From NCBI GenBank assembly GCA_965649765.1, contig OZ287751.1:24056001-24120000 (forward strand): 64,000 nucleotides of DNA, given 5' to 3'. The translations under genes were made by a program, and so were the position numbers. This document shows positions 5,432-64,000 of this stretch, piece after piece (the stretch's first letter is position 1; every line of letters begins with the position of its first letter). This stretch comes from Bispira polyomma. Its lineage: Eukaryota. The notes beneath the pieces were generated by a model that did no database searches, was not told the DNA's origin, and saw only the letters and a program-made list of their open reading frames with translations.

Positions 5432-8400
5432 CTGTAAAATACAGACAACCATACAATTAGGGCGGTAATGGTCGGGTAAAGATTCATATTCTTGTCCAGT
5501 GTCATAAACTTGTCCACTTTTTTGAGCCTTTCCAAAAATTTTTTATTGTAATATTCAGAAAGGTAATATCCTGAAAACACAGATTCGTTTCAATTGAAAT
5601 TATATGTACTTAATTTATCGAGGATTTTTTCATACATTTTTTTTGCTGACATTTAAGAAGCTCGAAAAAAGTGGTCTAGTTTAGGACATCGGACAAGTTC
5701 ATGCCGATGGGTGTACTCGCAGGGTTTAGTATCTACCACTGGCAAGTGTGTGGTAAACATAATGGGAGATTCCAAAAATGGAACTTTTTGACAGAAAATG
5801 TGCCGATTACATTATATAAGATATGGTGTACTACATAATAAAATGTTGATTATTACATGAAAAATTAAACACAGATTGATATCATTCAGGGTTGCAATGT
5901 GTACATAGAATGCATCCTGAGGATATACAACCTTTTCCAGGTTGCTAAGATAGTATTTTTGAGGAATCAAGCTGGATATCATGCATGCGAGTCCTTACAA
6001 ACATAGATTCGTTCAGCCAACGTCAAATGTTCATTCAGAGCCCTTTAAAATTGCGAACCAACTAAGAAAACACCACATGATAAGAACCCTGGGGCTGTAT
6101 TCACATAAGGTATTAGTCTTAATCTGAAATTCTTTTGTTACTGTCACTGAGACTAAGACCAAAATCTTAACGTTTTCGGCCAAAATGTCAGGCTTAAGAC
6201 GAAGACCCTTTGTTAATACGGCCCCGCAACTTATGCTTAGGAAATTACTATTTGTTACAGGATACTACAATCGGAGAAAATTGAAATTCTAAAAAAACTG
6301 TGGCAACTAGAATGAGGCCAAAAGTGGTTCATGATTTCCAATTAAAACAAGCAATTCCTGTGTCATTGAATTCAACATTTTGGTCAATCAGTAGTAGTAT
6401 TTTGAGTCTTTATTATTAATACAAAATGCATGGGTTTCAGTTTTACTTGCAACACCTTTCTCTTTATTACTTGGAAGAATTCACTCATGGAGTCTATTTT
6501 AGTAACCAAACATCCTTTCTGTCCAGGACCAAACACAATATATATAACAGGCATTTACACCTCTGTCAGGAAAAAAATGCTGCTGAAACCTATGTACTCG
6601 TATTCGTAATGATATTTATACTAAGCAGAGTATATCTCCCTGCCGTGTTAGTATTCAAAGCACTAATTGACCTTTTCTTGACTAACAGAAGTACAGCCAT
6701 CCAGCACCAGTAACTATTGTTGTCCTGACTCAAGACCGAGGCTTCAGGAAGACCATTTATCAATATCCACAAGGTTCTTGGACTCTTCCAATGACAGAGG
6801 ACCACCATTTTAAGTGGTTATCAGAACCAGACTAGGATCGAACCCAGGTCCTTCTGTGTTTACTTCTGTGTGAGTGTGTTACCGACCACTAGGCTAAGCA
6901 AGTGTGATAATTACTAGACTACAGTGCTAGGGACTGTATTCACAAAAGGTCTCAGTCTTACCATTTATGTCTCAAATATCTGATACTGCCTACTGCTAGT
7001 GTTGGTGTTTAGTGCAAAGTTAACACAAAGCAAAGATGTTTTTGTACTGTCACTGGGACTAATGCCAAAATCTTCACCTTTTCAGGCCAAAATCAAAGAT
7101 CGAAATCTTAAGACTTAGATCTTGTGAATATGGTCCAGGGGCCGTATTCACAAAGGGACTTAGCCAAGTCTTAGGCTTAAATCAGTACACTTTTGTGCTA
7201 GATTTAAGCCTAAGACCTGTCTAAGATCTTTCGTGAATACGAGCCCAGATCAACTATTTAAGGCCTATAAAGTTGACAACTTGGGTACATACTTGCACAC
7301 AGCATCTGCATTGTCGGCTTGAAAGAAGTAGGTGCGGCGGGCATTGTAGACTTTGAAGGTTGTGGGTTTGTGGATATCGTCTCCTTTGGTTGTCTGACAG
7401 AATGAGAATCTCTTTAGTGTCAGAGATCCCACAACTTGGTGGTCCTGGAGATTAATATCAATACATAGTATGTCAGGGCCCGTATTCACGAAAGGACTTA
7501 GCCAGGTCTTAGACTTAAATCAGTATAATTTTGTGCTAGATTTAAGCCTAAGACTTGGCTAAGTTCTTTCGTGAATACGGCCCCTGGGACCTATATAGCA
7601 TATAGTACTTAATATATACAGTACATAACAGAATAAGAATCTCTTTAGTGTCAGAGATCCCACAACTTGGTGGTCCTGGAAATTAATATCAATACAGTAG
7701 GCTCTGTTTAAGTAGAACAAGTGTAAGTTTAATTTAGGTACAACTGGAATCAGTTTTTGAGGTCCCAACGTCAGAAAATGCTGCAATTTTGTTGGTATAA
7801 GTGGAAGTTAGCCATAACTAGAACTAAATCCTGTGGATATTGGAGGTTCTAGTTATACAGAGTCTACTGTACATAGTATGTCAGGGACTTATACATCATA
7901 TAGTACTTAACATCTACAGTACATAACAGAATAAGATCCTCCCCTGAGAATTCCCCCAAAGAAAGAAAAAAATATCTCCCATACAACAACATGGCATATA
8001 GGTAATATGTGCTACATATCAACATTCACACAGAGGGCCTTTCTACATTACATTAACAGCACAGATTTGTGTGGGCTATGAGGGAAAAATCTCCACCATT
8101 TACGTGGACCTATGTTTTGTCAATTTTCTTTGTAGTGGACTGAGTTTATTTTGATTTTAACATTGTTTTCAACAATTATGTGTTATAGTTTATTGTACAG
8201 GCAGTATTACTGGTGGAGGAAACCAATACAATGTAGTTGGGCAAGGTCGTTTTCGTCACTGCAACCTACCGACTTTCAGCAAGTCTACTGCTAACATTCC
8301 TTTATAAATGTGGCTGAAATTCAAAGCCTGATTGCAAAGGTGAAAGGTTGGAGGCGAAAGTATTACCTCTGCACCACAGTGATCCATTTATTTAGAGGTG

Positions 8401-11400
8401 TAGTAATTGATATTTCCATTTAAATTCTACACTATACTGTCTATTAAGTGGAAATCTGGACTGTATTTTAACAGTTGAACCCCTTTAGGCTAAACATCAA
8501 AGGGAACCAATATAAATACCTCTAGTTATGCCAAACTCTTTTAGTATAACTCTTTTTAATTTGATTTGTATGAGGAGAAACTTATCTGTAGTTCCACAAA
8601 GGCCTTTTTCTTTCAAAAGCTACTGTGGAAAATGGAAACCCACTCAATTGACAACTATGTAAGTCAAATAGAAAATTGATATACACACTGTATAATAGCA
8701 TGCTTAAGACTCATTGTCATATAGCAATACCAGCATGTATTTGTAGTACATCCAGGGTGCCACTTCCTACCTTGAAGTTTTTAAAGGAGTAGAGCACACC
8801 GTGACTGTGTAGTGTAATCCACCGTTTGTGCCAGCAGTGGCCTTTATTGAAGCTCAACTGGAGGTAGCCAGCTATGTTACAGGGGTCACTGGGTCCAACC
8901 TGGGCACACAATATATATATGTACAGAAAATAGAATGTGCGCATTGACTCTATATTAAAACCAGTAAGATTTTTTTTGTCTCTGAGACAGACTGGAAATA
9001 AGGAACACCAAATTTGATGTAAATCAGTTTGGTGGTTTTATATGTAATCCGGTAACAAACAAACCAACCAATGAACACAAGGAAATACACAACTTCTTTC
9101 GTGGAATCAATTAGGTCAGATAAAACATGTGGTGCACTTCCTGCTATTGCAGATTTAATTACAAATTAAAACATTGTAGAATATTTGCTCAAAATGGTTG
9201 ACAGTGGATTTTAACTAGAGAAGAATACAGGTGTTTCAAGGGTTTATATTTATCACCAGTACCTACATTAGGGATATCACAGGTAACTATATACTATGAC
9301 TAATTCCCATATTAGCAATTTTACACGCATAATTTGACCTGTATACCTGGATTAGGGATATCCCATGGAACTGTATACTATATTATTATGTATTTACGCA
9401 CATACCATCAGCAATACCTACATTACGATATCCTATGTAACTGTATACTATACCACTTACACCCTTTCTATTTACACACAGTATACCAAACACCAATATA
9501 CTTACAACAGGGACATCCCAGGTGGCTGTAGACTGTAACAAGTCCCTATTACTGACCAATATACTTACAACAGGAACCTCCCAGGTGGCTGTAGACTGTA
9601 ACAAGTCTATAAATGACCAATATAGTTACAACAGGAACATCCCAAGTGGCTGTACACTCTAACAAGTCCCTATAACTGACCAATATAGTTACAACAGGAA
9701 CATCCCAAGTGGCTGTAGACTGTATCAAGTCCCTACCACTGACCAATATACTTACAATAGGGACATCCTAAGTAGCTGTAGACTGTAACAAGTCCCTATT
9801 ACTGACCAATATACTTACAACAGGAACCTCCCAGGTGGCTGTAGACTGTAACAAGTCTATAAATGACCAATATAGTTACAACAGGAACATCCCAAGTGGC
9901 TGTAGACTGTATCAAGTCCCTACCACTGACCAATATACTTACAATAGGGACATCCTAAGTAGCTGTAGACTGTAACAAGTCCCTATTACTGACCAATATA
10001 CTTACAACAGGAACCTCCCAGGTGGCTGTAGACTGTAACAAGTCTATAAATGACCAATATAGTTACAACAGGAACATCCCAAGTGGCTGTACACTCTAAC
10101 AAGTCCCTATAACTGACCAATATACTTACAACAGAAACATTCCAAGTGGCTGTAGACTGTAACAAGTCTCTATTACTGACAGATATACTTACAACAGGAA
10201 CATCCCAAGTGGCTGTACACTGTAACAAGTCCCTATAACTGACCAATATACTTACAACAGGGACATCCCAAGTGGCTGTAGACTGTAACAAATCCCTATT
10301 ACTGATTAACACAAAACACTCATCACACACACGTGTCAGCTTCATCTCTTCATAATCTAACTTGATCTTATGACTGCCACACTTCTGACAAACAAGCTGG
10401 AAGTAGATACACTGGACATAAGTATATCAAAAATGGCAAATACATTTAAATGATTCAGTTAAATCCAATATAACAGTTATGAAAAGTATAAATATTCACA
10501 TGAATTCAGGTTTAAAATGGCAATAGTTTCTATCTACATTTCACTCGACATATGAAAAAACATTTATTAGAGCATATTTACAAAATAGCAAACGAGATTC
10601 TAAAACCATACAGCCACAGGTGGAAAAGCCTTACAATTTATAAGTGAAGCAGACAAATTCTAATTCTATTGAATATCTGTACCCAACATACTAAACATAA
10701 AGTTCAGATAAAGATCATTAATCAAAAGTCAAAATAAGATCAGACATCTACACGCCCTGATAAGTATTTCTGCCAGTGATGAACTTCCTGTGACAAGTTG
10801 TTATTGAGATATAGTCTAACTCCCAAGTTCGAGGGTTAAAGTGAGGTCAGACCATAAGTTACCATATTAAGTTGCTATGGCCTATATTTTTTTATGTCTA
10901 ATCTTGAAAAGGAAACACTCCCCAGTCCAACAACCAAAAACGGGACGTGACAATTTACCAAAAGCCATTATTTTTGACTGTGAGACAACAACAAGCAGAA
11001 ACATATTTTTTTTTCTAAATTTGGCAATTGTAATAACTGGCATGTTCCTTCCATAATAGATACATGTTCTGAGGCTTTTGTTCCGCCTATCTCTACTATA
11101 GAAATAACCCACGGCAAACCATGGTATACACAGAATTTTAGCAGAACTGAAAGCGCCATAACATATCCTAGTTAGAATAGGAATAACCTGCTCCAATACA
11201 CAGAATTTTACCATGATTCCAGGTTTAGGACCACTGAGGTTACTATAGCTCCGACTTTGTGGTCCTAAACATATCGGATGAAAAGAAGCGCTACTTTGGC
11301 TAAAGTCGGATGGGCTCGGATATTAATAAATCGGCCGACGTCGGAATCTGCTAAAAAGAAGTCCAGGAATATAGGAAAGATTTAGTGCATAAAAAGTACA

Positions 11401-14400
11401 TGATTAGACTTATAACTACTGACTTTCCTCAAACTGAGTTGCACATCCTACCCACAAGCACAAACATTCCATCCATCCCCACACAGATTTATATGATCAC
11501 TACTTAGTACTTACCATTCCACATCCTTTACAGTTGTTGACTTTCTTCAGACCCCCCTTACATATATAACACAGAGGCTGACCCTGGGGACTCTCGGGTC
11601 TGGGGGGGACTTTACCTATGTCTTCTTCCTGTAAATACACAGCAGTAAGTCTATGTTTTCATAGCAGCAATAGGCGATGGCAATCAAGTGATGGCCGACG
11701 GCAATTTTTATGTTTTCGCTACCCGGAGCACAAATGCTAAAAATTAATCGTATTAGTGTAAAAATTTAAAACCCTCATAACATATTTCTTATAAGTATAC
11801 TAACTGGACACGATGTATAGTAACTTTAAGTGAAATTGTTTCTATAATAGATAAGATACAAATTTGATTTTATGAACCAAATTAAACTCTGTATTTTTTT
11901 TGGTTTTTATTTTGTTTTTGTACTAAACCTCTTCAATTTTATGAAATTTTTTATCTGAACAAAATGTCCACTGCCAACTTGTTCAAATAAACATTGTTTC
12001 CGCTGTGTTTGACAAACTATGTGTACGTATTGTATTTAAAGTTCAAGCTGACATCACACAAAAACAACTGTATGCTGTAAGGATTCTCTGTACCAAATAC
12101 AAAATTGCTTTCAAACTTTAGTCCTCAAATATACCACTCTGAATATATCATTTGGGTTATTAATAAGGTCATAACTCCAAAGGTCGAAAGTCATACAACG
12201 GTAAGACTGTGATATACTTCCCATCTTCCAGGTATGAATATCCCCTTATTTCTGAGATATAGTTCAGATTAGGTATGACATGCCACACCATGAAGACAAG
12301 CAATTGATATTGTGTAAGTCATCACTGGATCTGAGAGAAATATGGTGTTTATTGTGTAAGTCATCACTGGCTCTGAGGGAAATATGGTCAAACACCAAGT
12401 CCCCATCACCCAGACAATGTGAACTGTTGTGTATCAGAGCATTATGCCTGTACACACTCATGATGAACACCATGATCATTTACCCTACAGTAACCAGCTA
12501 TAAATATATACAGTGGAACCCATATTATCCAAACATGTTTGGTGAACATTTTGCTAGGGTAATAGAAGGTTATGAATAAAAAGGGAATTTTAGTAGAACA
12601 CAACGGAAAAGTAAACATAAACTTGGGAGGTGGAAAATGTTTTCATGAAATTGAATGTTTGGAAAATAGAAGTTTTGAATTTCTACTGTATAAAAGTAAA
12701 ACGTACAGGTCTAAAGAATTGACACCTTTGAAAGTAATTGTAAGTAATACTCTTTGGTATTACTAAACAGAAGGCTGACATGCTATAAAATACCAACAAT
12801 AAGATATTATTAGATAAGAGTAGACTCCATACAAGCCAAATGTCCAATATGCAAAGGATTAGGATCTACTCATACCTAATTTCTACTTATGCCTAATTTA
12901 CAATTATCCTTGAATTACGGAACAGAGGGATAATTGGTTCTAGTCATAGAGTACTTCAACTTACACTGGTTCTAGTTACAGAGAAATCGACAGTATACAA
13001 CATTTCATCAGGGGTTTCAATTTAATGAACTACCCTACTAGTAAATGTGTGTGTTGGGACTGGTTTTTAAGGAGCATTATCTGAATGGAGACAAGTTAGC
13101 TTTATATTGACTGTTCTGCACATGGGGTGGGGTGGTGGTGGTGAAGGGGGTGCAGGGGTGTTGTGTGTGTGTGTGTGGGGGGAGGGGTCCCAGTTAACAT
13201 ACACCCACACATTTGCATCTACTTACTGGTATGGTTTTCTGTATAACAGACACAGGCTGAGAGAGAAGCTTTTTCTTAGTGTACTCGTCTACAGCAGCCT
13301 GCATGGTCTATAAATAGAAAAAAACAGAAAATAAAAATGTACAGTAGGAGTGTGGTATATACAGCCAACTTCTCACCACCCCACCACCCCTTTCCCTTGG
13401 TGAGTATACCAGAGGGGTTACTATGTGACAAAGCAAAATTTACCGTTTGCTATTCAATAAAGACCCCCGAGTTAATTATAGTCAATGCACACAACCTCCC
13501 CCTCCCACGCCCCTTGGAGAGTGTGTCAAAAGATATGAATGTCTGTGACGAGGCAAAAATACCATATTTAATGTAATAAAGGCCCCCAAATTAATTATAG
13601 CCATTGATCCCTCTTGAATTTGAATTTAGTTAGGTTTTATGTCACTATCAACAGCAAAGGTCACTTCACAATAGTCAGAGTTAATGGTCGACAGAACAAG
13701 GGATGAAGTTACTGTAAACCACTGTCCTACGGCAAGTAGCAAACCAACTATATGAAGGAACAAACAGGATTCAAACTCTTGGGAGAGGCCAGTGACTATG
13801 AAACAAACACATGATTGTTTAATATTATGTCACACCACTGTTATGTCACACCACTGCATATCAACATTTATTACAACGTCCCCTTTGGAAGAACTTTAAG
13901 CCCCCGGGATTTTATAACACAAATTTGGGTGAAACAGGGTGGATCTAGGAATTGTTTTTTACTTTTTAGTATTGTGGCACCTTGGTGGAGGTATGCACTC
14001 TACTGAGAGCTATTCTAGTTTACCATTCCCATGTAACCACTACACATGTTAATACATTGTCATCAAATGTTGTTAAAACAATGATTACAAATAACCAATA
14101 TAAAATATTCTCTGATTAAAATATATTTACATACATTTGATGTTCATGGGTATAATTTTGCACTTCGATAATTTTGGGGTATAGTGTTAAGTAGCTTACT
14201 GTAACTACATAATTTATTGCAAAAAGGTTCGATTTGTATAAAGAGTTTTTATCAATGAATTATTCACAACTACGGTATATTCCTAACTGAATATTAATAA
14301 GAGCCCTTTTATTAGAAACCTGACAAAATTACATTTAATTAGATCCAGACTTAAATTTTAAAGTTATTGATCTCTATTATATAAGAGCCATTTAATCCAA

Positions 14401-17400: not shown

Positions 17401-20400
17401 TCACTCCATCTACCCAGCACTGACAGCCAACACCCAATGCCAAACCGACTCTATCGGTCTAGGTGACAAAAGCAAAATCTGTCAACATTGACCTGTGTAC
17501 AAACCAGGGCCCATGGTCTCAAAAGGCGGACAAGCTTTAAAACTTAAGACTCAACTCACATGAAGGCTATATGTAATTCTTGTATATCAAAATCACCTAT
17601 ACTTGTGACCATTCATTTTAACAGACCTTTCAATGCTGAATTCAAATATGCAGACATATTTCATGTATCATCAGACACACTTATCGCTTTTAGGAAAAGA
17701 CTTAAAACCTTTCTTGCGACCTTGTTATGTCCATGGATCGTACGATTTAATCACTGATTCTGCTTTTGCACTTTAGAAGATGCCCAGCATCAATAAAGTG
17801 TGTTTAAAATGCATACCGAAATAATCCGCGGAAGCACCCGATCTCGTATTATCACCCACCCCCCAAAATGTGCCCAAAATCTTTTAAACACCCAATTTTA
17901 CACGCAAAAAAAATCCATACCACAAGTAATATATATATTAATTACCAAATAAAATCTACTTTCCCTTGTTTATTACATACATATTATATCATTTTAGTCC
18001 AGTGTTTATAACGTAAACAAACCACGTAGTTTTTGATATGACGCAGTTTACTGGTTTGCAGGCATCCTACATAATAACATCATAATGGCCAATGCTCACG
18101 TAATCGCCCACCTTCGGTTTCTCTCTAGTTTCGAATTACCTCCCAGTGGGCGCTTCCGCGGATGATTTCAGTAATAATAATAATAAATAATCTTCCCTCA
18201 AGCCAGAGATAGGAAGACCTTTAAGGTGGGCTTAAGTCTGACTTGAGTTTGAGACATAAAAAAAATATAATGTTTTATTTTGAACAAAGTTGGCTAATTC
18301 AAATCTCATCCTTGGATTATAGAGTATAATCTGGTGCCTAGTGTACGTTATCTGCAATTAGCTATCAGCAATCTGCTACATGGAAGCATGGGCTTAAAGT
18401 GAACTTCAGTGTGTGCAGTAAATGCCAACTCACTTGCATTTTGTCTACAGGGAGGGGGAACTTCAGCTTAAACTTTCCGCCAAGGCCTGAGGAAGTGCAG
18501 ATAAGCAGCATGTCGTCCATCTGAAAGTGTACAAATAATAGAAATAAAGAACACATCATGAAGAGTTTTGGAAAAAGATTAGTTACAGATTCAAAAGAAC
18601 AAATGATAACATACATCAATTAAAATAAAATGTATTAATAATAGAAACTCAATTATCCAGCTCCTATTATTTAACAATCAAATTTGACAAAAACATTTTG
18701 ATACTCTAAAATTTAAATATTATTATTGTGTTATACTAAAATGCCTGTTTTATTTCACAAACTTTCAATTATCTAAACAAAATATTGCTCTTTCAAATTT
18801 TTAGAAACTGTACATTTATTTCATTCCTATAACCCGTAAATCTCGCTTTTTACAGACAAAGCACCCATGTACCTCCTCTCCGAGTGTTCTATTTACCAGA
18901 AAGAGCTGTCGGTCCAGTTTTTTGCCTGTCTTTGCACAGATGGACTTGATCTTGCCTTCCTTGATGAGATCTCTGAGTGGGGAGACGATACTCATAGCAG
19001 AGGAGTCCAGTCTCTGTTGAACAGAACGCAGCCTCTTCATCCGTTCCTGTGTGAAAACAAGTGTGTAAAATAAGTCAAAACAAGTGTGTAAAACCAGCCA
19101 GAAGAAGTGTGTATAACCAGTCAAAATAAGTGTGTATAACCAGTCAGAACAAGCATATAAAACCTGTGTAAACCAGTCAAAAAGTGTATCAAAACAGTTG
19201 TCCAAAACAGTTGTCCAAAATAGCTGTGTCAATCAGTTAATACAAGTCAAAAAAGCCTGAACAAACCCACTTCAGTAAAACTCTGTTTAGTCAAACATCC
19301 AGTTTTAAGTCAGAAATGTAAAATGTTTTGGTCCTTATTAAACATTTTACACCTGATTTCCATCACATTCCACCATAGCTACCTAAGGTATTATGCTTCT
19401 TTTATTAAAGTACCTTATTGTATGTGAAGTACCTTGTCCAATTGTGCCATTCCCAGACCTCCGGCGAGGATCAATCCTGGGACCTGATGGTTTTTTTGGT
19501 CACTTTTATACAAATACCTTTGTCTATCTTTATTTTCACAAAAGTGTGGCTATTTTTCAACCAATCTCTGTCAAGGTTAGTACAACCAGTGTAAGTCGAA
19601 TTTAGGTATAATTTAGGTTTTGAGGTTCCAACATCAGAAAATGCAGTATTTTTATAGATATAACTAGAACCCAATCCTGTCCATAACTAAATTCTAATCC
19701 TGTGGATATTGGAGGTCCCAGTTATACAGAGTCTACTGTACATTCTATCGTTGGTAAAACAACAAAGACAAAAATTGTGACCTTGTGACTTTTTATAATG
19801 ATGGGTCTCCTGAGTATAATTTTGCATCAGCTGGGGATTCCACTAGTAACCAATGTGAACATTTAATGAAATGAGTAGTGTATTTTTTTTCACTGCCATA
19901 GCGTGGCCACACAAACCTCACAACAAAAGTTTCTATGACTTTTCCATGATCTATAAAATGTTTCCATGGTCTCGCTAGTGTTAATGACAATATTTGTTAT
20001 TACATCCTAAATTAGACTTTTTTAAAGAAACTTCTCCAGTTCCTGTGTTACTAGCCATTGCTCATTTTGGTCAGTTGGAAGCAAAGGTCAAATTTTGAGC
20101 TCGTTGAGAAAAAATAGACTGTTCCTAAATGTGTAAAAAAACAAACTCAGTGTGACACCATTGATTTCAACACTGGACCAGACCAGAGAATTGATTGTAT
20201 TTCTAGCTGGGTTACAACGATAAATTTAAGTTTCTAATGACCTTTAGATACAGATGTACCTGTATACAATATTGTATAACCCAGAACTCAATAGGAACTG
20301 CTTATAGTTGCTACCCTACACACAGTATCCCTGTAGTACTAGCTGTGTATGTGATAGATCATCACACTGATGCACCTACTGGCAACATTTTTTTAAATGC

Positions 20401-29400: not shown

Positions 29401-32400
29401 TGCAAGGCACTTTTATGTTTCCCTAGAATGACTTTAGTCACACTTACCTAATAACCAGTGCTTGGAAAAAACCCTCTACAAACTGAGGCTTTGGGGTCCG
29501 CAACTTAAACTCCTGCTTAAACTCAAATACCACAGATATAATTTTCCTTATTTAATGGGAATAACGTGACATGTTACTGTGTTGTTTTCATATAGCTAAT
29601 TTTAGCCAGAAACTCAAATACAAAATCGGATTTTAGATATCTTTATTGAACATACAGCTGGGCATATCTTCAGATTATTGAGACTTCGAGCCCTTTGATA
29701 AATATAGTCCCAGAGCTGGTGTTCACAAATATTCTTTTTTTTTTGTTTCAATCGATTTGATTGGCCGAATAAGAATATTTTTTTTTATTCAAAGAATGTT
29801 TGTGAAGATGGCTTCTAGGTCTTAAAGTCTTAACAAAGATGAGATCCTATAATATAGATACATGTAAGTACCGTATTTAAGGTCAAGCTTGTCTACAAAG
29901 ACCCTCTAGGACATAAGGCTATATACATGTCAACATACAAACAAAACAGTAGCAAGGGTTACTTTAAGTTAGGCCCGCTTTACGCAGGCAATTGCTGAAT
30001 ATAGGTCTACTCTGGTACAGATTTGATTTAGACCAAATACATTTGACAAGATTCCTCACTGTTATTTTGATGGCGGAATCGTGAAAAGACAATCTAGCAG
30101 TAAAATACAGCCATATATTCGGCGTCAGCATACTCAGGCTACATTAAACTGTACATGCAGTTACCAGATATTTCAGAATAACTTTTACAATGCTACTGCA
30201 TGGAGACAAAGGTTTTTAACTTTTATATCAACCGAATTTTATGGAAACAGAAATAAACCACAATAAAAGGTGGACTAAAAGTAAGTGAAAATACTGGGAT
30301 TTGTCATGATATTTTCTCATATAGATCCTTGACATTATTAGCCCAAGGAAATGAGAACTGTGAAATGCAATTATTTGGAGTCTACAATAAAGTCACTGAC
30401 ACTCGTGGTGTCTTGGTCCTCACAATCATTGAAGATATTTCCCCTTTTTACTTTTAATTTCTTTTTCATGCTTTATAGTTACCATTGTTGACCTACATGT
30501 ACATCATAATGTGTATATTTTGTATTTTAGTCGATAATTTACATGTGCTATCGATTCCTATCCTTGTTCGTGTGTCACAGTTTTCACACTAAACTAAACT
30601 ACAACCAACAAAATCTAGATAGTCAGATGTCTTGAGTGCCTATCAAACTGAACTGAAATACTCAAGCCCGTGACCGCACTTGTCATTTTTCGCAACCCTT
30701 CAGAAAATAGTATCAGTACTTTTACTCACAAACTTACACTATGTAAGTGGCAAAAATATATACTTTAAAGAAAGTTTCAATGTATGACAACCCTATAGAA
30801 TTTATTTTTGGTTTTACTATTGTCCCCTTAATTACCATTTCCAAGACTATTTATTTAGCCATGTTTGTTGGACATGGTTAAAGACACACTGCCACTACCT
30901 GCAATTGTGGCCCAGGAATACCATACCCACTTGGGAACACAGAGGACCTGGATTCAATGTCAGTCTGGGGCTCCAAAATATAGGCAGATACAAATTGGCT
31001 CAGATGTCACCACATAAAATTAGTGGTCCTCTGTCAGTGTATCCTATCCTGAGTAGTAGGTTAAAGGGGAGTTCCACACTCAGGATTTGGTTCCCGACAT
31101 TCCCGACTTTGTGATCGATAACAGAAAATCGGCGAAACGTATAGGTCGGGGGCCGAAAACGGGGTGGTCGGGAAGAATTTCAAACATGTTTGATTTTTTG
31201 TAAAAGTGTCCCGACGTGTCCGCGACCTATAAAAACGGGAAGATCGGCTTCGGCAAATAAGTTCGATCCTAATGTCTTAATATCCATCCAGGCCTGTCCT
31301 AACACTGGCCAGTAGAAACGTACAGGTCGGGGGGCAAAAACGGGGTGGACTGGAAGGTCAGGAAGAATACAGACACACATTTTAAGCCTAGTTTGTCATT
31401 TTGTCAGTCCCGACAACTGAATTCAGTTTGAAAGTTTACTTTTGCGACAGCAAACCCACTTCCGGTGCAGTTCATGTACACAAACAATGAAATTATTTGC
31501 TGTAATTTACAACAAACTTTCATCAAAAATGAGGTTTAAACAGGTATTATTTCTTTTATTTCAGTTGCAATAACCTCATTTTGTCATCTATATTATACCA
31601 TAACAGTCCCGACTTTGACTTTTTATACGTTCGATCCTTATGGTCAGGGACATGAATCCGTCAGATCGTATTGCTGACAAGTTTGATCCTAGGGCGATAC
31701 GTCAGATCCTATCACTAGTAAAGTAAGATCGAGGTCGCGGGCCCGTCAAAACGGGGCGCAATCAGTTCAATCGGCAAGGTCGGGACACATTTTCATTTTC
31801 CCGCCCAAAAAGTGCATTTTTCACAATTTTTGGTCCCCACCACCCCAACTTTAAAGTCGGGGACGTTTTTCCGATCGAACTTGAATGTGGAACCCCTCTT
31901 TAAGAAACTTTTATAAACTTTGATAAATGGTCATCTTCCAGCCTCCTCTGTCTTTTTAGAATTTCTTACCAAGTGTTTTGGCCCTGGGAAAAGTTGGCAT
32001 AAAAGCAGCAAAGATTTTAATTAAATTTCAATGATATGACCTGGGGCTGGAGTGATTATGGTCTCCAACTGTAGGATCATTTCAGATTATGTAAGTTATG
32101 TAACATGATGTTAACATTATTACAGGTAACAGGACACGGTTGCTGTGGACTTACCTCCACATTCTGTATGAGTTTCTGGAAAATCAGCGAAGTTTTTTAA
32201 AAATTTTAATGAGATGGCCTGGTGGAGTGATTATAGTCTGCTACTGCCGGGTCATATCAGATTCTATGTTAAATAACACGAGGATAATAATATTAGTGGT
32301 AACAGGAGACAGTTGTTGTGGACTTACCTCCACTTCCTGTACGAGTTTTTGGAAGACCTGACACTTTTCCATCCAGACAGTCATAGTGGTCATGGCCGTG

Positions 32401-61472: not shown

Positions 61473-62692
61473 AAAAACTGTGAACTGGGAAAAATAACTA
61501 TAAAAACACTCTCAGGAAGAATTACTTCATATATTGTCAGTCTCATTTTACACAAATCTATGGAAAATATAGACTTGCCTGAATACAGGGCTACAGCATG
61601 AAGACATTCTTCCAATTTTTGTTGTAATTTTAATATTCTTTAAATTACCACAGACGTTCACAATTACCACAAAATTATTCCTGTTTGGTAAATTACTTTA
61701 CATGAATGAAAATTAGACTAAAGACAAACGGCTAACAGCTACTTCTTTTGATTAATATAATTTTAATATACCTGTGTCATATATATTATCAAAATTACAC
61801 AGTTGCACAAAAAATTTCTATAAAATTACAGAGTTCAATCCAAAAAAACATGATAACTTTGTAAGAACATCCTGAAATAGTGTCGACCTGACAGAAAGTA
61901 TTTCATGCAATGTCCATGCTGAGATAGCCTCCCTCTATCAGTGAAGGAAATACCATGTAGTTGTAAATTAGTGTACTTGTAAGTAGTATATTAGAACAAT
62001 ATGTATGCATTACGTAGTTGTAAATTAGTGTCGTTGCAAGTAGTATATAAGTGCATTATGTGTGTATTATGTAGTTGTAAGTAGTATATTAATGCAATAT
62101 GTGTGTATTACGTAGTTGTAAATTATTTTAGTTGTAAGTAGCATATTAGTATATTATGTATGTATTCCATAGTAAATTAGTGTACTTGTAAGTAGTATAT
62201 TAGAACATTATGTATGTATTATGTAGTTGTAAGCAAGTGAAGTGGGGTTTTAAATTATTTTAGTTGTAAGTAGCATATTAGAACATTATGTATGTATTAT
62301 GTAGTTGTAAATTAGTGTACTTGTAAGTAGTACATTAGAACATTATATATTACGTAATTGTAAATTAGTGTACTTGTAAGTAGTATATTAGAACATTATG
62401 TATTATGTAGTTGTAAATTAGTGTAGTTGTAAGTAGTATATTAGTACATTATGTATGTATTACGTAGTTGTAAATTCGTGTACTTGTAGGTAGTATACTA
62501 CAACATTATGTATTATGTAGTTGTAAACTAGTGTAGTTGCAAGTAGTATATTAGTATGTTAGTACATTATGTATGTATTACGTAGTTGTAAATTTGTGTA
62601 CTTGTAAGTAGTATACTAGAACATTATGTAGTTGTAAACTAGTGTAGTTGCAAGTAGCATATTAGTACATTATGTGTGTATTATGTAGTTGT

Positions 62693-62936
62693 ATTTGAAT
62701 ATTTAACGTCCACTCTAGTACCTTTTAGTAGGTTATATTGGAACGGGTAGTTGGAAACGCTGGAGGAAACACTGCATAGTCGGTCAAGGTTCTGCAGAGA
62801 AACCAGCGGCCCACAGTAAGGAACTACCACCTTTCCCACATAGGCATCGACAGGATTCGAACTCACGCCGCCCAGAGGTGAGAGACCAGTGATTGTGAAG
62901 CGCAATGCTTGCTAACCACTAGGCCACCAGGGCCCC
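62693..62936 (-). mobile_element. Same SINE family, full length, no TSD, at the minisatellite inversion point
   Basis: Near-identical to 63390-63650. Confidence 0.9.
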
Positions 62937-63389: not shown

Positions 63390-63650
63390 TTTTTTTTTTT
63401 TTTTTAATTTGGATATTTAACGTCCACTCTAGTACTTGTTTAGGTTATATTGGGACGGGTAGTTGGAAACGCTGGAGGAAACACTGCATACAGTTGATCA
63501 AGGCTCTGCACTGAAACCAGCGGCCCACAGTAAGGAACTACCACCTTTCCCACATAGGCATTGACGGGATTCGAACTCACGCCGCCCAGAGGTGAGAGAC
63601 CAGTGATTGTGAAGCGCAATGCTTGCTTACCACTAGGCCACCGTGGCCCC
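63390..63650 (-). mobile_element. Young full-length tRNA-derived SINE with poly(A) tail and 13-bp TSD
   Basis: A box TGGCCTAGTGG, B box GTTCGAATCC; TSD ACTACCTACAACT at 63377-63389 and 63651-63663. Confidence 0.92.
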
Positions 63651-64000
63651 ACTACCTACAACTACCCTAATTTAAAATACAACTGTACTTATAGGTGAAC
63701 CAAAGGCAAAATTCAAAGTAAAATCTAAAACGCATGTATATACAACTGAATCGCCTTAAAAAATGTTTTGATAATCTATTTTTCACATAAGTTTGGTTTA
63801 AAACCTGATAAAAACAATTTTTTACATAATTTGGTAGCTCACAAAAGTTGGTTTGTTTACCTACAAAATTATCGGGTTTTTTGACAGCTCTAGAAACGAC
63901 CAAACCATAATTTATTGTCCAATTTTAATATTTTCATTTTTAGCTGTTATAGCTTGCAAAACGTCCGAAATTAGTCCAAACATAGTGAACCATTAGTTAC

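What the first reader, a model, noticed from the sequence alone, without database searches (positions are those of the whole stretch)
9492..10305. Splice-donor ladder: a 63-bp in-frame minisatellite made of an exon end plus its 5' splice site
Seen: the last 48 nt of exon 14 plus the first 15 intron nt are repeated 13 times. Every unit carries a donor (9 GTAAGT, 4 GTAACT), and the 63-bp unit is exactly 21 codons (SNRDLLQSTATWDVPV|VSILV). Exon ends at 10256, 10193, 10130 and 10067 are all in frame with exon 15, adding 0, 21, 42 or 63 aa between FYVE and PH2. Beyond these a 61-bp unit shifts frame (stop at 9986-9988), and two units carry TAG in the unit frame, so distal donors give truncated or NMD-type products. 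Inference: a VNTR that could tune both linker length and the productive-transcript fraction through donor competition, varying between alleles. This is the best candidate for an undescribed system in the window.
Basis: partly seen in the sequence, partly recalled or inferred. Interest (0 to 1): 0.85.

Follow-up and report, generated by a model that had tools for sequence, protein, structure and literature searches.

The report
Splice-donor minisatellite in an FGD intron
The end of one exon and its splice signal were copied 13 times into the next intron of a cell-signalling (FGD RhoGEF) gene; this is a known kind of repeat (a 'mirage'), common in this animal's genome, and the copies look like decaying junk rather than a tuned splicing switch.

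Summary
The array is real: 13 donors on the minus strand (9 GTAAGT, 4 GTAACT), spaced 63 nt (three steps 61), after the FYVE-ending exon of an FGD RhoGEF gene. Read depth matches the assembled copy numbers. It is a 'mirage' minisatellite, a class described in amphioxus and in human F7, LMNB2, PDGF, CBS and 6-16, where only the first donor, or the first three, are used. Orthologous exons from four other animals end at, or two codons before, the first donor and show no array. The copies show no coding constraint (5 synonymous, 14 non-synonymous variants, a stop, a frameshift). The +63-aa rung's donor lacks both -1G and +5G, so only +21 and +42 aa are plausible. Three older, more decayed copies lie beyond the array, and two other junctions of the gene are also duplicated. 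At least 9 of 40 sampled donor arrays elsewhere in the genome begin in coding exons, with no clear excess of in-frame periods. No RNA data were found, so donor usage and allelic variation are untested. The scan reported this class earlier elsewhere in this genome. Verdict: new member of a known kind, probably neutral; minor leaky use possible.

The parts
10256..10396 (-). Host exon ('exon 14', 141 nt, phase 0/0): C-terminal half of the FYVE finger plus the start of the FYVE-PH2 linker of an FGD-type RhoGEF
   Evidence: Pfam FYVE E=1.1e-4; weak best PDB match FGD5, E=0.065; orthologous exon L034 has the same 47 codons
9492..10305 (-). Mirage minisatellite: 13 units of 63 nt (three steps of 61), each 49-50 nt of exon end plus 14-13 nt of intron start; internal 187-nt higher-order duplication (units 5-7 = 8-10, 4-5 = 11-12)
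   Evidence: depth support
10248..10258 (-). Donor 1, GTT|GTAAGTAT (first intron base 10255): the ancestral, authentic donor
   Evidence: orthologous exon ends L033, L034, L035/L036, L038
10122..10195 (-). Donors 2 and 3 (10192, 10129): same 9-mer as donor 1, in frame, stop-free; the only plausible alternative rungs (+21, +42 aa)
   Evidence: usage not tested
10059..10069 (-). Donor 4 (10066), GTT|GTAACT: in frame but lacks both -1G and +5G, probably dead (same change at 9879, 9692, 9629)
   Evidence: PMC8283771
9986..9988 (-). TAA ending the read-through frame after the first 61-nt step; every donor from no. 6 on includes it
9414..9455 (-). Older degenerate copy of the same exon end and donor (1 of 3)
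   Evidence: local alignment score 37 vs null maximum 29.5; family D1
9343..9382 (-). Older degenerate copy (2 of 3); donor GT lost
   Evidence: score 38
9260..9310 (-). Older degenerate copy (3 of 3); stops in the exon frame
   Evidence: score 49.5; translation
8771..8899 (-). Next exon ('exon 15', 129 nt, phase 0/0): start of the second PH domain; supplies the single acceptor
   Evidence: Pfam PH E=0.038; 63% identical from residue 1 to the orthologous exon in L035/L036
11515..11628 (-). Preceding exon ('exon 13', 114 nt), N-terminal half of the FYVE finger by its Cys pattern
   Evidence: exon prediction; no Pfam hit on its own, so inferred

Best explanation
A neutral 'mirage' minisatellite. 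A short tandem duplication across the exon-14/intron-14 junction (about 50 nt exon + 13 nt intron) seeded a repeat that grew by slippage or unequal exchange to 13 units. An earlier round at the same junction left three decayed copies further into the intron. The spliceosome uses the most upstream donor (10255) for nearly all transcripts, giving the ancestral 141-nt exon and a normal FYVE-PH2 linker. The downstream donors are pseudo-sites. Donors 2-3 may leak at a low level; use of donors 5-13 would give premature stops. Shown: anatomy, ancestral donor position, lack of coding constraint, older layer, recurrence in the gene and genome. Inferred: the mutational mechanism, and first-donor dominance (by analogy with tested loci).
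For: Orthologous exons end 10-12 residues after the conserved RD, phase 0; L034 has exactly the 47 codons ended by donor 1; none shows an array at the site. Distinct unit variants: 5 synonymous, 14 non-synonymous including a stop, against a neutral expectation of 23-29% synonymous, P 0.44-0.68; in units 2-4, 3 of 11. Four of 13 donors have lost +5G and three steps shift frame. The outermost units 1 and 13 differ at 2 positions while unit 1 differs from inner units at 4-5, as reported for mirage turnover. Three of 24 junctions tested in this gene carry clear junction-spanning duplicates, one more is marginal. At least 9 of 40 donor-bearing arrays from contig C1 start inside a Pfam-matched coding exon; only 2 of these 9 have a step divisible by 3. 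Literature: amphioxus mirages do not disturb splicing; human F7, LMNB2 and PDGF use only the first donor, by upstream-first selection.
Against: No RNA evidence either way. Donors 2 and 3 are identical to donor 1 over -3..+8, and donor 1 has a poor exonic half, so competition is physically possible. Human CBS and 6-16 do use two extra donors. The synonymous/non-synonymous test rests on 19 variants and has low power. The scanning rule was shown in mammalian cells, not in this invertebrate.
Confidence: 0.77

Rival explanations
1. Leaky but unselected ladder: donors 2 and 3 are used at appreciable levels (over 10%), giving minor isoforms with +21 or +42 residues in the FYVE-PH2 linker, tolerated because they lie between domains.
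For: [quoted passage not shown]
Against: F7, LMNB2, PDGF and amphioxus mirages show no such use. No predicted protein matching the read-through frame was found, a weak negative given the tool's length and word limits.
Confidence: 0.17
2. Adaptive rheostat: repeat number and donor competition tune linker length and the productive versus NMD fraction, and vary between alleles under selection.
For: Unit length is exactly 21 codons; the first four donors are in frame; the insertion point is an inter-domain linker.
Against: No coding constraint on the units; donor 4 degraded; orthologues lack the array and keep a short linker; in-frame periods not significantly enriched among similar arrays (8 of 17, P=0.17; 16 of 38 overall); other loci have longer open ladders (L045: 14 open rungs); no allele variation seen.
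Confidence: 0.03
3. Micro-exon or intron-gain substrate: an internal TTACAG in each unit acts as an acceptor, so a 27-nt in-frame micro-exon from a distal unit is spliced in (the model of Ebner et al. 2010).
For: The AG follows a CAG codon 27 nt before each donor, phase 0; model proposed for mirages.
Against: Acceptor scores are poor: -6.6 to 1.6 in the five units scored, against 3.1 for exon 14 on a rough matrix, though exon 15's own acceptor also scores low (0.4). No RNA evidence.
Confidence: 0.02
4. Assembly artefact.
For: Tandem arrays are often mis-assembled; no single contig spans the array; one piece in run X2 is about 1.5x where 2x is expected.
Against: Contig pieces match the assembly with no differences. 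Depth over flank in X1 is 2.9, 2.2, 2.1 and 1.0 where the assembly predicts 3.0, 2.09, 2.0 and 1.0; X3 agrees. Units carry many distinct variants.
Confidence: 0.01

Closest known systems
Amphioxus 'mirage' minisatellites (Adh3, globins BflGb6/9, troponin C, PGBD5; Canestro et al. 2002 as cited in PMC3087553 and PMC3902484)
   Same: Tandem unit spans an exon-intron boundary and repeats the splice site into the intron; 63 nt lies in the reported range (10-160 nt); inner units homogenised, edge units excluded; several per gene.
   Different: Different animal (1.04-Gb, about 35% GC genome, taxon not determined here); unit is a whole number of codons with two open rungs; an older fossil layer is visible; somatic or allelic instability not shown here.
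Human F7 IVS7 37-bp VNTR; LMNB2 100-bp and PDGF 81-bp junction minisatellites (PMC1557585)
   Same: First unit holds the authentic donor, followed by identical pseudo-donors competing for one acceptor; only the most upstream is used.
   Different: Here most of the unit (about 50 of 63 nt) is exonic, against 4 of 37 in F7; usage and polymorphism are established there and untested here.
Human CBS intron-13 VNTR and 6-16 (IFI6) intron-2 minisatellite (PMC1557585 introduction)
   Different: Usage is shown by transcript analysis there; here there is no RNA. These cases make even a leaky ladder a known phenomenon.
FGD family Cdc42 GEFs (DH-PH-FYVE-PH)
   Same: Host gene has RhoGEF exons, then a FYVE exon, then PH exons in that order.
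   Different: Assigned from exon-level matches only; PH1 exons were not matched by Pfam and no full-length model was searched.

Membership tests
mirage minisatellite | Head-to-tail tandem repeat with a minisatellite-sized unit | tested here: met
   period 63, 13 copies
mirage minisatellite | Unit spans a real exon-intron boundary | tested here: met
   FYVE exon; orthologous exon ends at the same point
mirage minisatellite | Splice site duplicated in the copies | tested here: met
   13 GT donors, 9 identical to the authentic intronic hexamer
mirage minisatellite | Normal splicing unaffected (reported property) | not testable with these tools
   no RNA run found
mirage minisatellite / VNTR | Copy number varies between alleles or cells | tested here: inconclusive
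   three DNA runs from two samples of one study, identical in the flanks, fit the assembled copy numbers; no second allele seen
functional alternative-donor ladder | Downstream donors used in transcripts | not testable with these tools
   no RNA; no matching predicted protein
functional alternative-donor ladder | Coding constraint on the in-frame units | tested here: not met
   5 synonymous vs 14 non-synonymous; 3 of 11 in units 2-4; neutral expectation 23-29% (low power)
functional alternative-donor ladder | Conserved in orthologues | tested here: inconclusive
   absent from five distant orthologous loci; no close relative available, and some contigs are short
FGD RhoGEF family | Domain order DH, PH, FYVE, PH | tested here: inconclusive
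   DH, FYVE and PH2 exons matched in order; PH1 exons are plausible by eye but have no Pfam hit

The most novel reading that the evidence does not exclude
Donors 2 and 3 are really used, in a tissue- or allele-dependent way, so a mirage repeat makes an in-frame +21/+42-residue linker series in an FGD GEF and repeat turnover changes the share of productive mRNA. That would be an invertebrate case of a mirage caught being recruited into coding sequence.
Probability: 0.06. Interest if true: 0.6.

Novelty: new member of a known kind. Interest (0 to 1): 0.2.

Why it matters
On its own the locus is one more mirage. Its modest value is as a test case. Three identical, in-frame, NMD-invisible donors let one measure directly whether upstream-first 5' splice-site selection, shown for human F7, holds in an invertebrate. 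The two-layer structure (13 recent units plus 3 old ones) shows that the same junction was amplified twice. If the rungs were used and regulated, it would show a junction repeat being recruited into protein-coding diversity.

Tried and rejected
Top hit of the representative search, P0001, was followed up and is a spurious Sushi-repeat match from a turtle. A search for proteins matching the read-through frame 9989-10396 found nothing. The run search found only DNA-like contig sets, so donor usage could not be measured. RNA folding of exon plus array shows no excess structure (z = +2.4), so structural masking of donors was dropped. Genome-wide counts of triple-donor patterns exceed reversed controls (1107 vs 268; 2707 vs 976), but a pattern with a non-consensus exon side is just as enriched (2445 vs 526). 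I therefore do not use those ratios as evidence; only the exon-confirmed arrays count. The unit has no second locus in the genome, so it is not a dispersed mobile element. The original mirage paper (PMC117041) is not held and is cited through PMC3087553 and PMC3902484. Splice-site scores come from a rough matrix of my own and serve only for ranking.

Full report
Observation. Tandem Repeats Finder reports one array at 9492-10305 with period 63, 13.0 copies and 87% matches. Read on the minus strand, each unit holds a GT donor; the first intron bases are at 10255, 10192, 10129, 10066, 10005, 9942, 9879, 9818, 9755, 9692, 9629, 9568 and 9505, nine GTAAGT and four GTAACT. Three steps are 61 nt, caused by the same 2-nt deletion. 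Joining each possible exon end to the acceptor at 8899 inside a script shows donors 1-4 in frame and stop-free, donor 5 giving a stop 12 nt into the next exon, and donors 6-13 including the TAA at 9986-9988.

Is it an assembly artefact? Three DNA-like contig sets hold the stretch. Laid on 8500-12500 they match with no base differences. Contig depth over the array pieces, relative to flank, is 2.9, 2.2, 2.1 and 1.0 in run X1, with X3 alike, where the assembly's 31-mer multiplicity is 3.0, 2.09, 2.0 and 1.0. One piece in X2 is about 1.5x rather than 2x, which I cannot interpret. These runs probably come from the assembled individual, so they check the assembly but say nothing about alleles in the population.

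Host gene. Exon-by-exon Pfam searches give RhoGEF exons at 40635-25900, a FYVE exon at 10396-10256 and PH exons at 8899-8771 and 7444-7293, the layout of an FGD-type GEF. The genome is 1.035 Gb in 75 contigs. I did not determine the taxon; earlier scan notes call it an annelid, which I did not test.

Which donor is authentic? The representative search recovered the orthologous exon from several other animals. In L034 the exon has exactly the 47 codons that donor 1 gives; in L033, L035/L036 and L038 it ends two codons earlier; all are phase 0. In L035/L036 the next exon aligns with ours from its first residue (63% identity). None shows a tandem array at this site. Donor 1 is thus the ancestral one and the short linker is the conserved state.

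Do the copies look functional? Against unit 1 there are 19 distinct substitutions: 5 synonymous and 14 non-synonymous, one of them a stop. Neutral change would give 23-29% synonymous (P 0.44-0.68). In units 2-4, the in-frame rungs, 3 of 11 are synonymous. The test is small, but shows no constraint. All donors have a poor exonic half (GTT or ATT), so they depend on the intronic match; four, including donor 4, have lost +5G. Introns lacking both -1G and +5G were 0.3% of a human sample (PMC8283771), so the +63-residue rung is unlikely and only +21 and +42 remain plausible. Units 5-7 equal 8-10 and 4-5 equal 11-12 over the compared positions, while the outermost units 1 and 13 differ at only two positions: ordinary minisatellite turnover.

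Beyond the stated coordinates. Three older copies of the same exon end and donor lie at 9455-9414, 9382-9343 and 9310-9260. They score 37, 38 and 49.5 against a maximum of 29.5 in 290 random segments, resemble one another, and the best one has stops in the exon frame. The junction has therefore been amplified at least twice. In the same gene, the donor of the exon ending at 32328 and the acceptor of the exon starting at 7444 are also duplicated: 3 clear cases in 24 junctions tested, and one marginal.

How unusual is it in this genome? I fetched 40 donor-bearing arrays from contig C1. At least 9 begin inside an exon with a Pfam match (Sec63, malic enzyme, TAF12, OCRL ASH, dynein heavy chain [weak, E=0.002], ankyrin, peptidase C78, DUF7042, NopRA1), and several more follow plausible exons without a match. 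The first step is divisible by three in 2 of the 9, in 8 of 17 counting the unconfirmed ones (P=0.17), and 16 of 38 periods overall. One array, L045, has 14 open in-frame rungs. A 21-codon unit is thus within chance. Raw pattern counts exceeded their reversed controls, but so did a pattern with a non-consensus exon side, so I give those ratios no weight.

What is known. Repeats whose unit spans an exon-intron boundary were named mirages in amphioxus Adh3 and were found in globin, troponin C and PGBD5 genes; they were reported not to disturb splicing and to be length-unstable (PMC3087553; PMC3902484). In human F7 a 37-bp VNTR repeats the donor five to nine times; the copies can function, but only the most upstream is chosen. 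LMNB2 and PDGF behave alike, while CBS and 6-16 use two extra donors (PMC1557585). I reached this reading before consulting the scan's notes; those notes report the same class on other pieces of this genome.

Mechanism and odds. Shown: origin as a junction-spanning duplication, ancestral first donor, unconstrained decay, recurrence. Inferred: first-donor dominance (0.77), appreciable but unselected use of donors 2-3 (0.17), an adaptive rheostat (0.03), micro-exon use (0.02), artefact (0.01). If a distal donor dominated, the gene would be truncated before PH2, which sits badly with the intact, conserved downstream exons (inference).

Verdict. A real, neat example of a known repeat class; new member of a known kind; interest 0.2. 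RNA junction counts would settle whether any rung is used.

Noticed in passing
window:9260-9455: Three older, more diverged copies of the exon-14 end and donor, spaced 70-84 nt; they share changes with each other and may record an earlier state of the exon end.
   Followed up: partly
window:7397-7696: Acceptor of the exon starting at 7444 is duplicated (69 nt, 97%) 231 nt upstream, with a palindromic MITE-like element (about 7474-7586) between the copies; a second copy of the element lies at about 7150-7260.
   Followed up: partly
window:32050-32354: Donor of the RhoGEF exon ending at 32328 is duplicated about 173 nt downstream with flanking sequence (90 nt, 81%).
   Followed up: partly
L045:2918-3737 (G000:C1 about 71.369 Mb): A 48-nt donor array with 15 donors and 14 stop-free in-frame rungs after a plausible exon (no Pfam match): a longer open ladder than the one in this finding.
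   Followed up: no
L049 and L053: Mirages at TAF12 (45 nt) and dynein heavy chain (36 nt) exon ends, each with two open in-frame rungs.
   Followed up: no
window:19048-19220: Degenerate 23-nt and 13-nt tandem repeats end just upstream of the acceptor at 19046; they cover the polypyrimidine region but do not cross the junction.
   Followed up: no
window:22880-24692: Broken reading frames that look by eye like a LINE reverse transcriptase, inside an intron of the gene; a similar fragment at 72-440. Not searched.
   Followed up: no
window:11180-11450 and 11580-11980: Very high contig depth marks two high-copy dispersed repeats between exons 13 and 14 and just upstream of exon 13.
   Followed up: no
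window:61957-63389: AT-rich degenerate satellite on opposite strands around two copies of a short element (62681-62905, 63440-63652); it contains a TGTAAGT word that may inflate donor-pattern counts.
   Followed up: no
window:56012-56064: Two-copy 25-nt repeat containing a consensus-like donor on the minus strand; no coding exon found upstream.
   Followed up: partly
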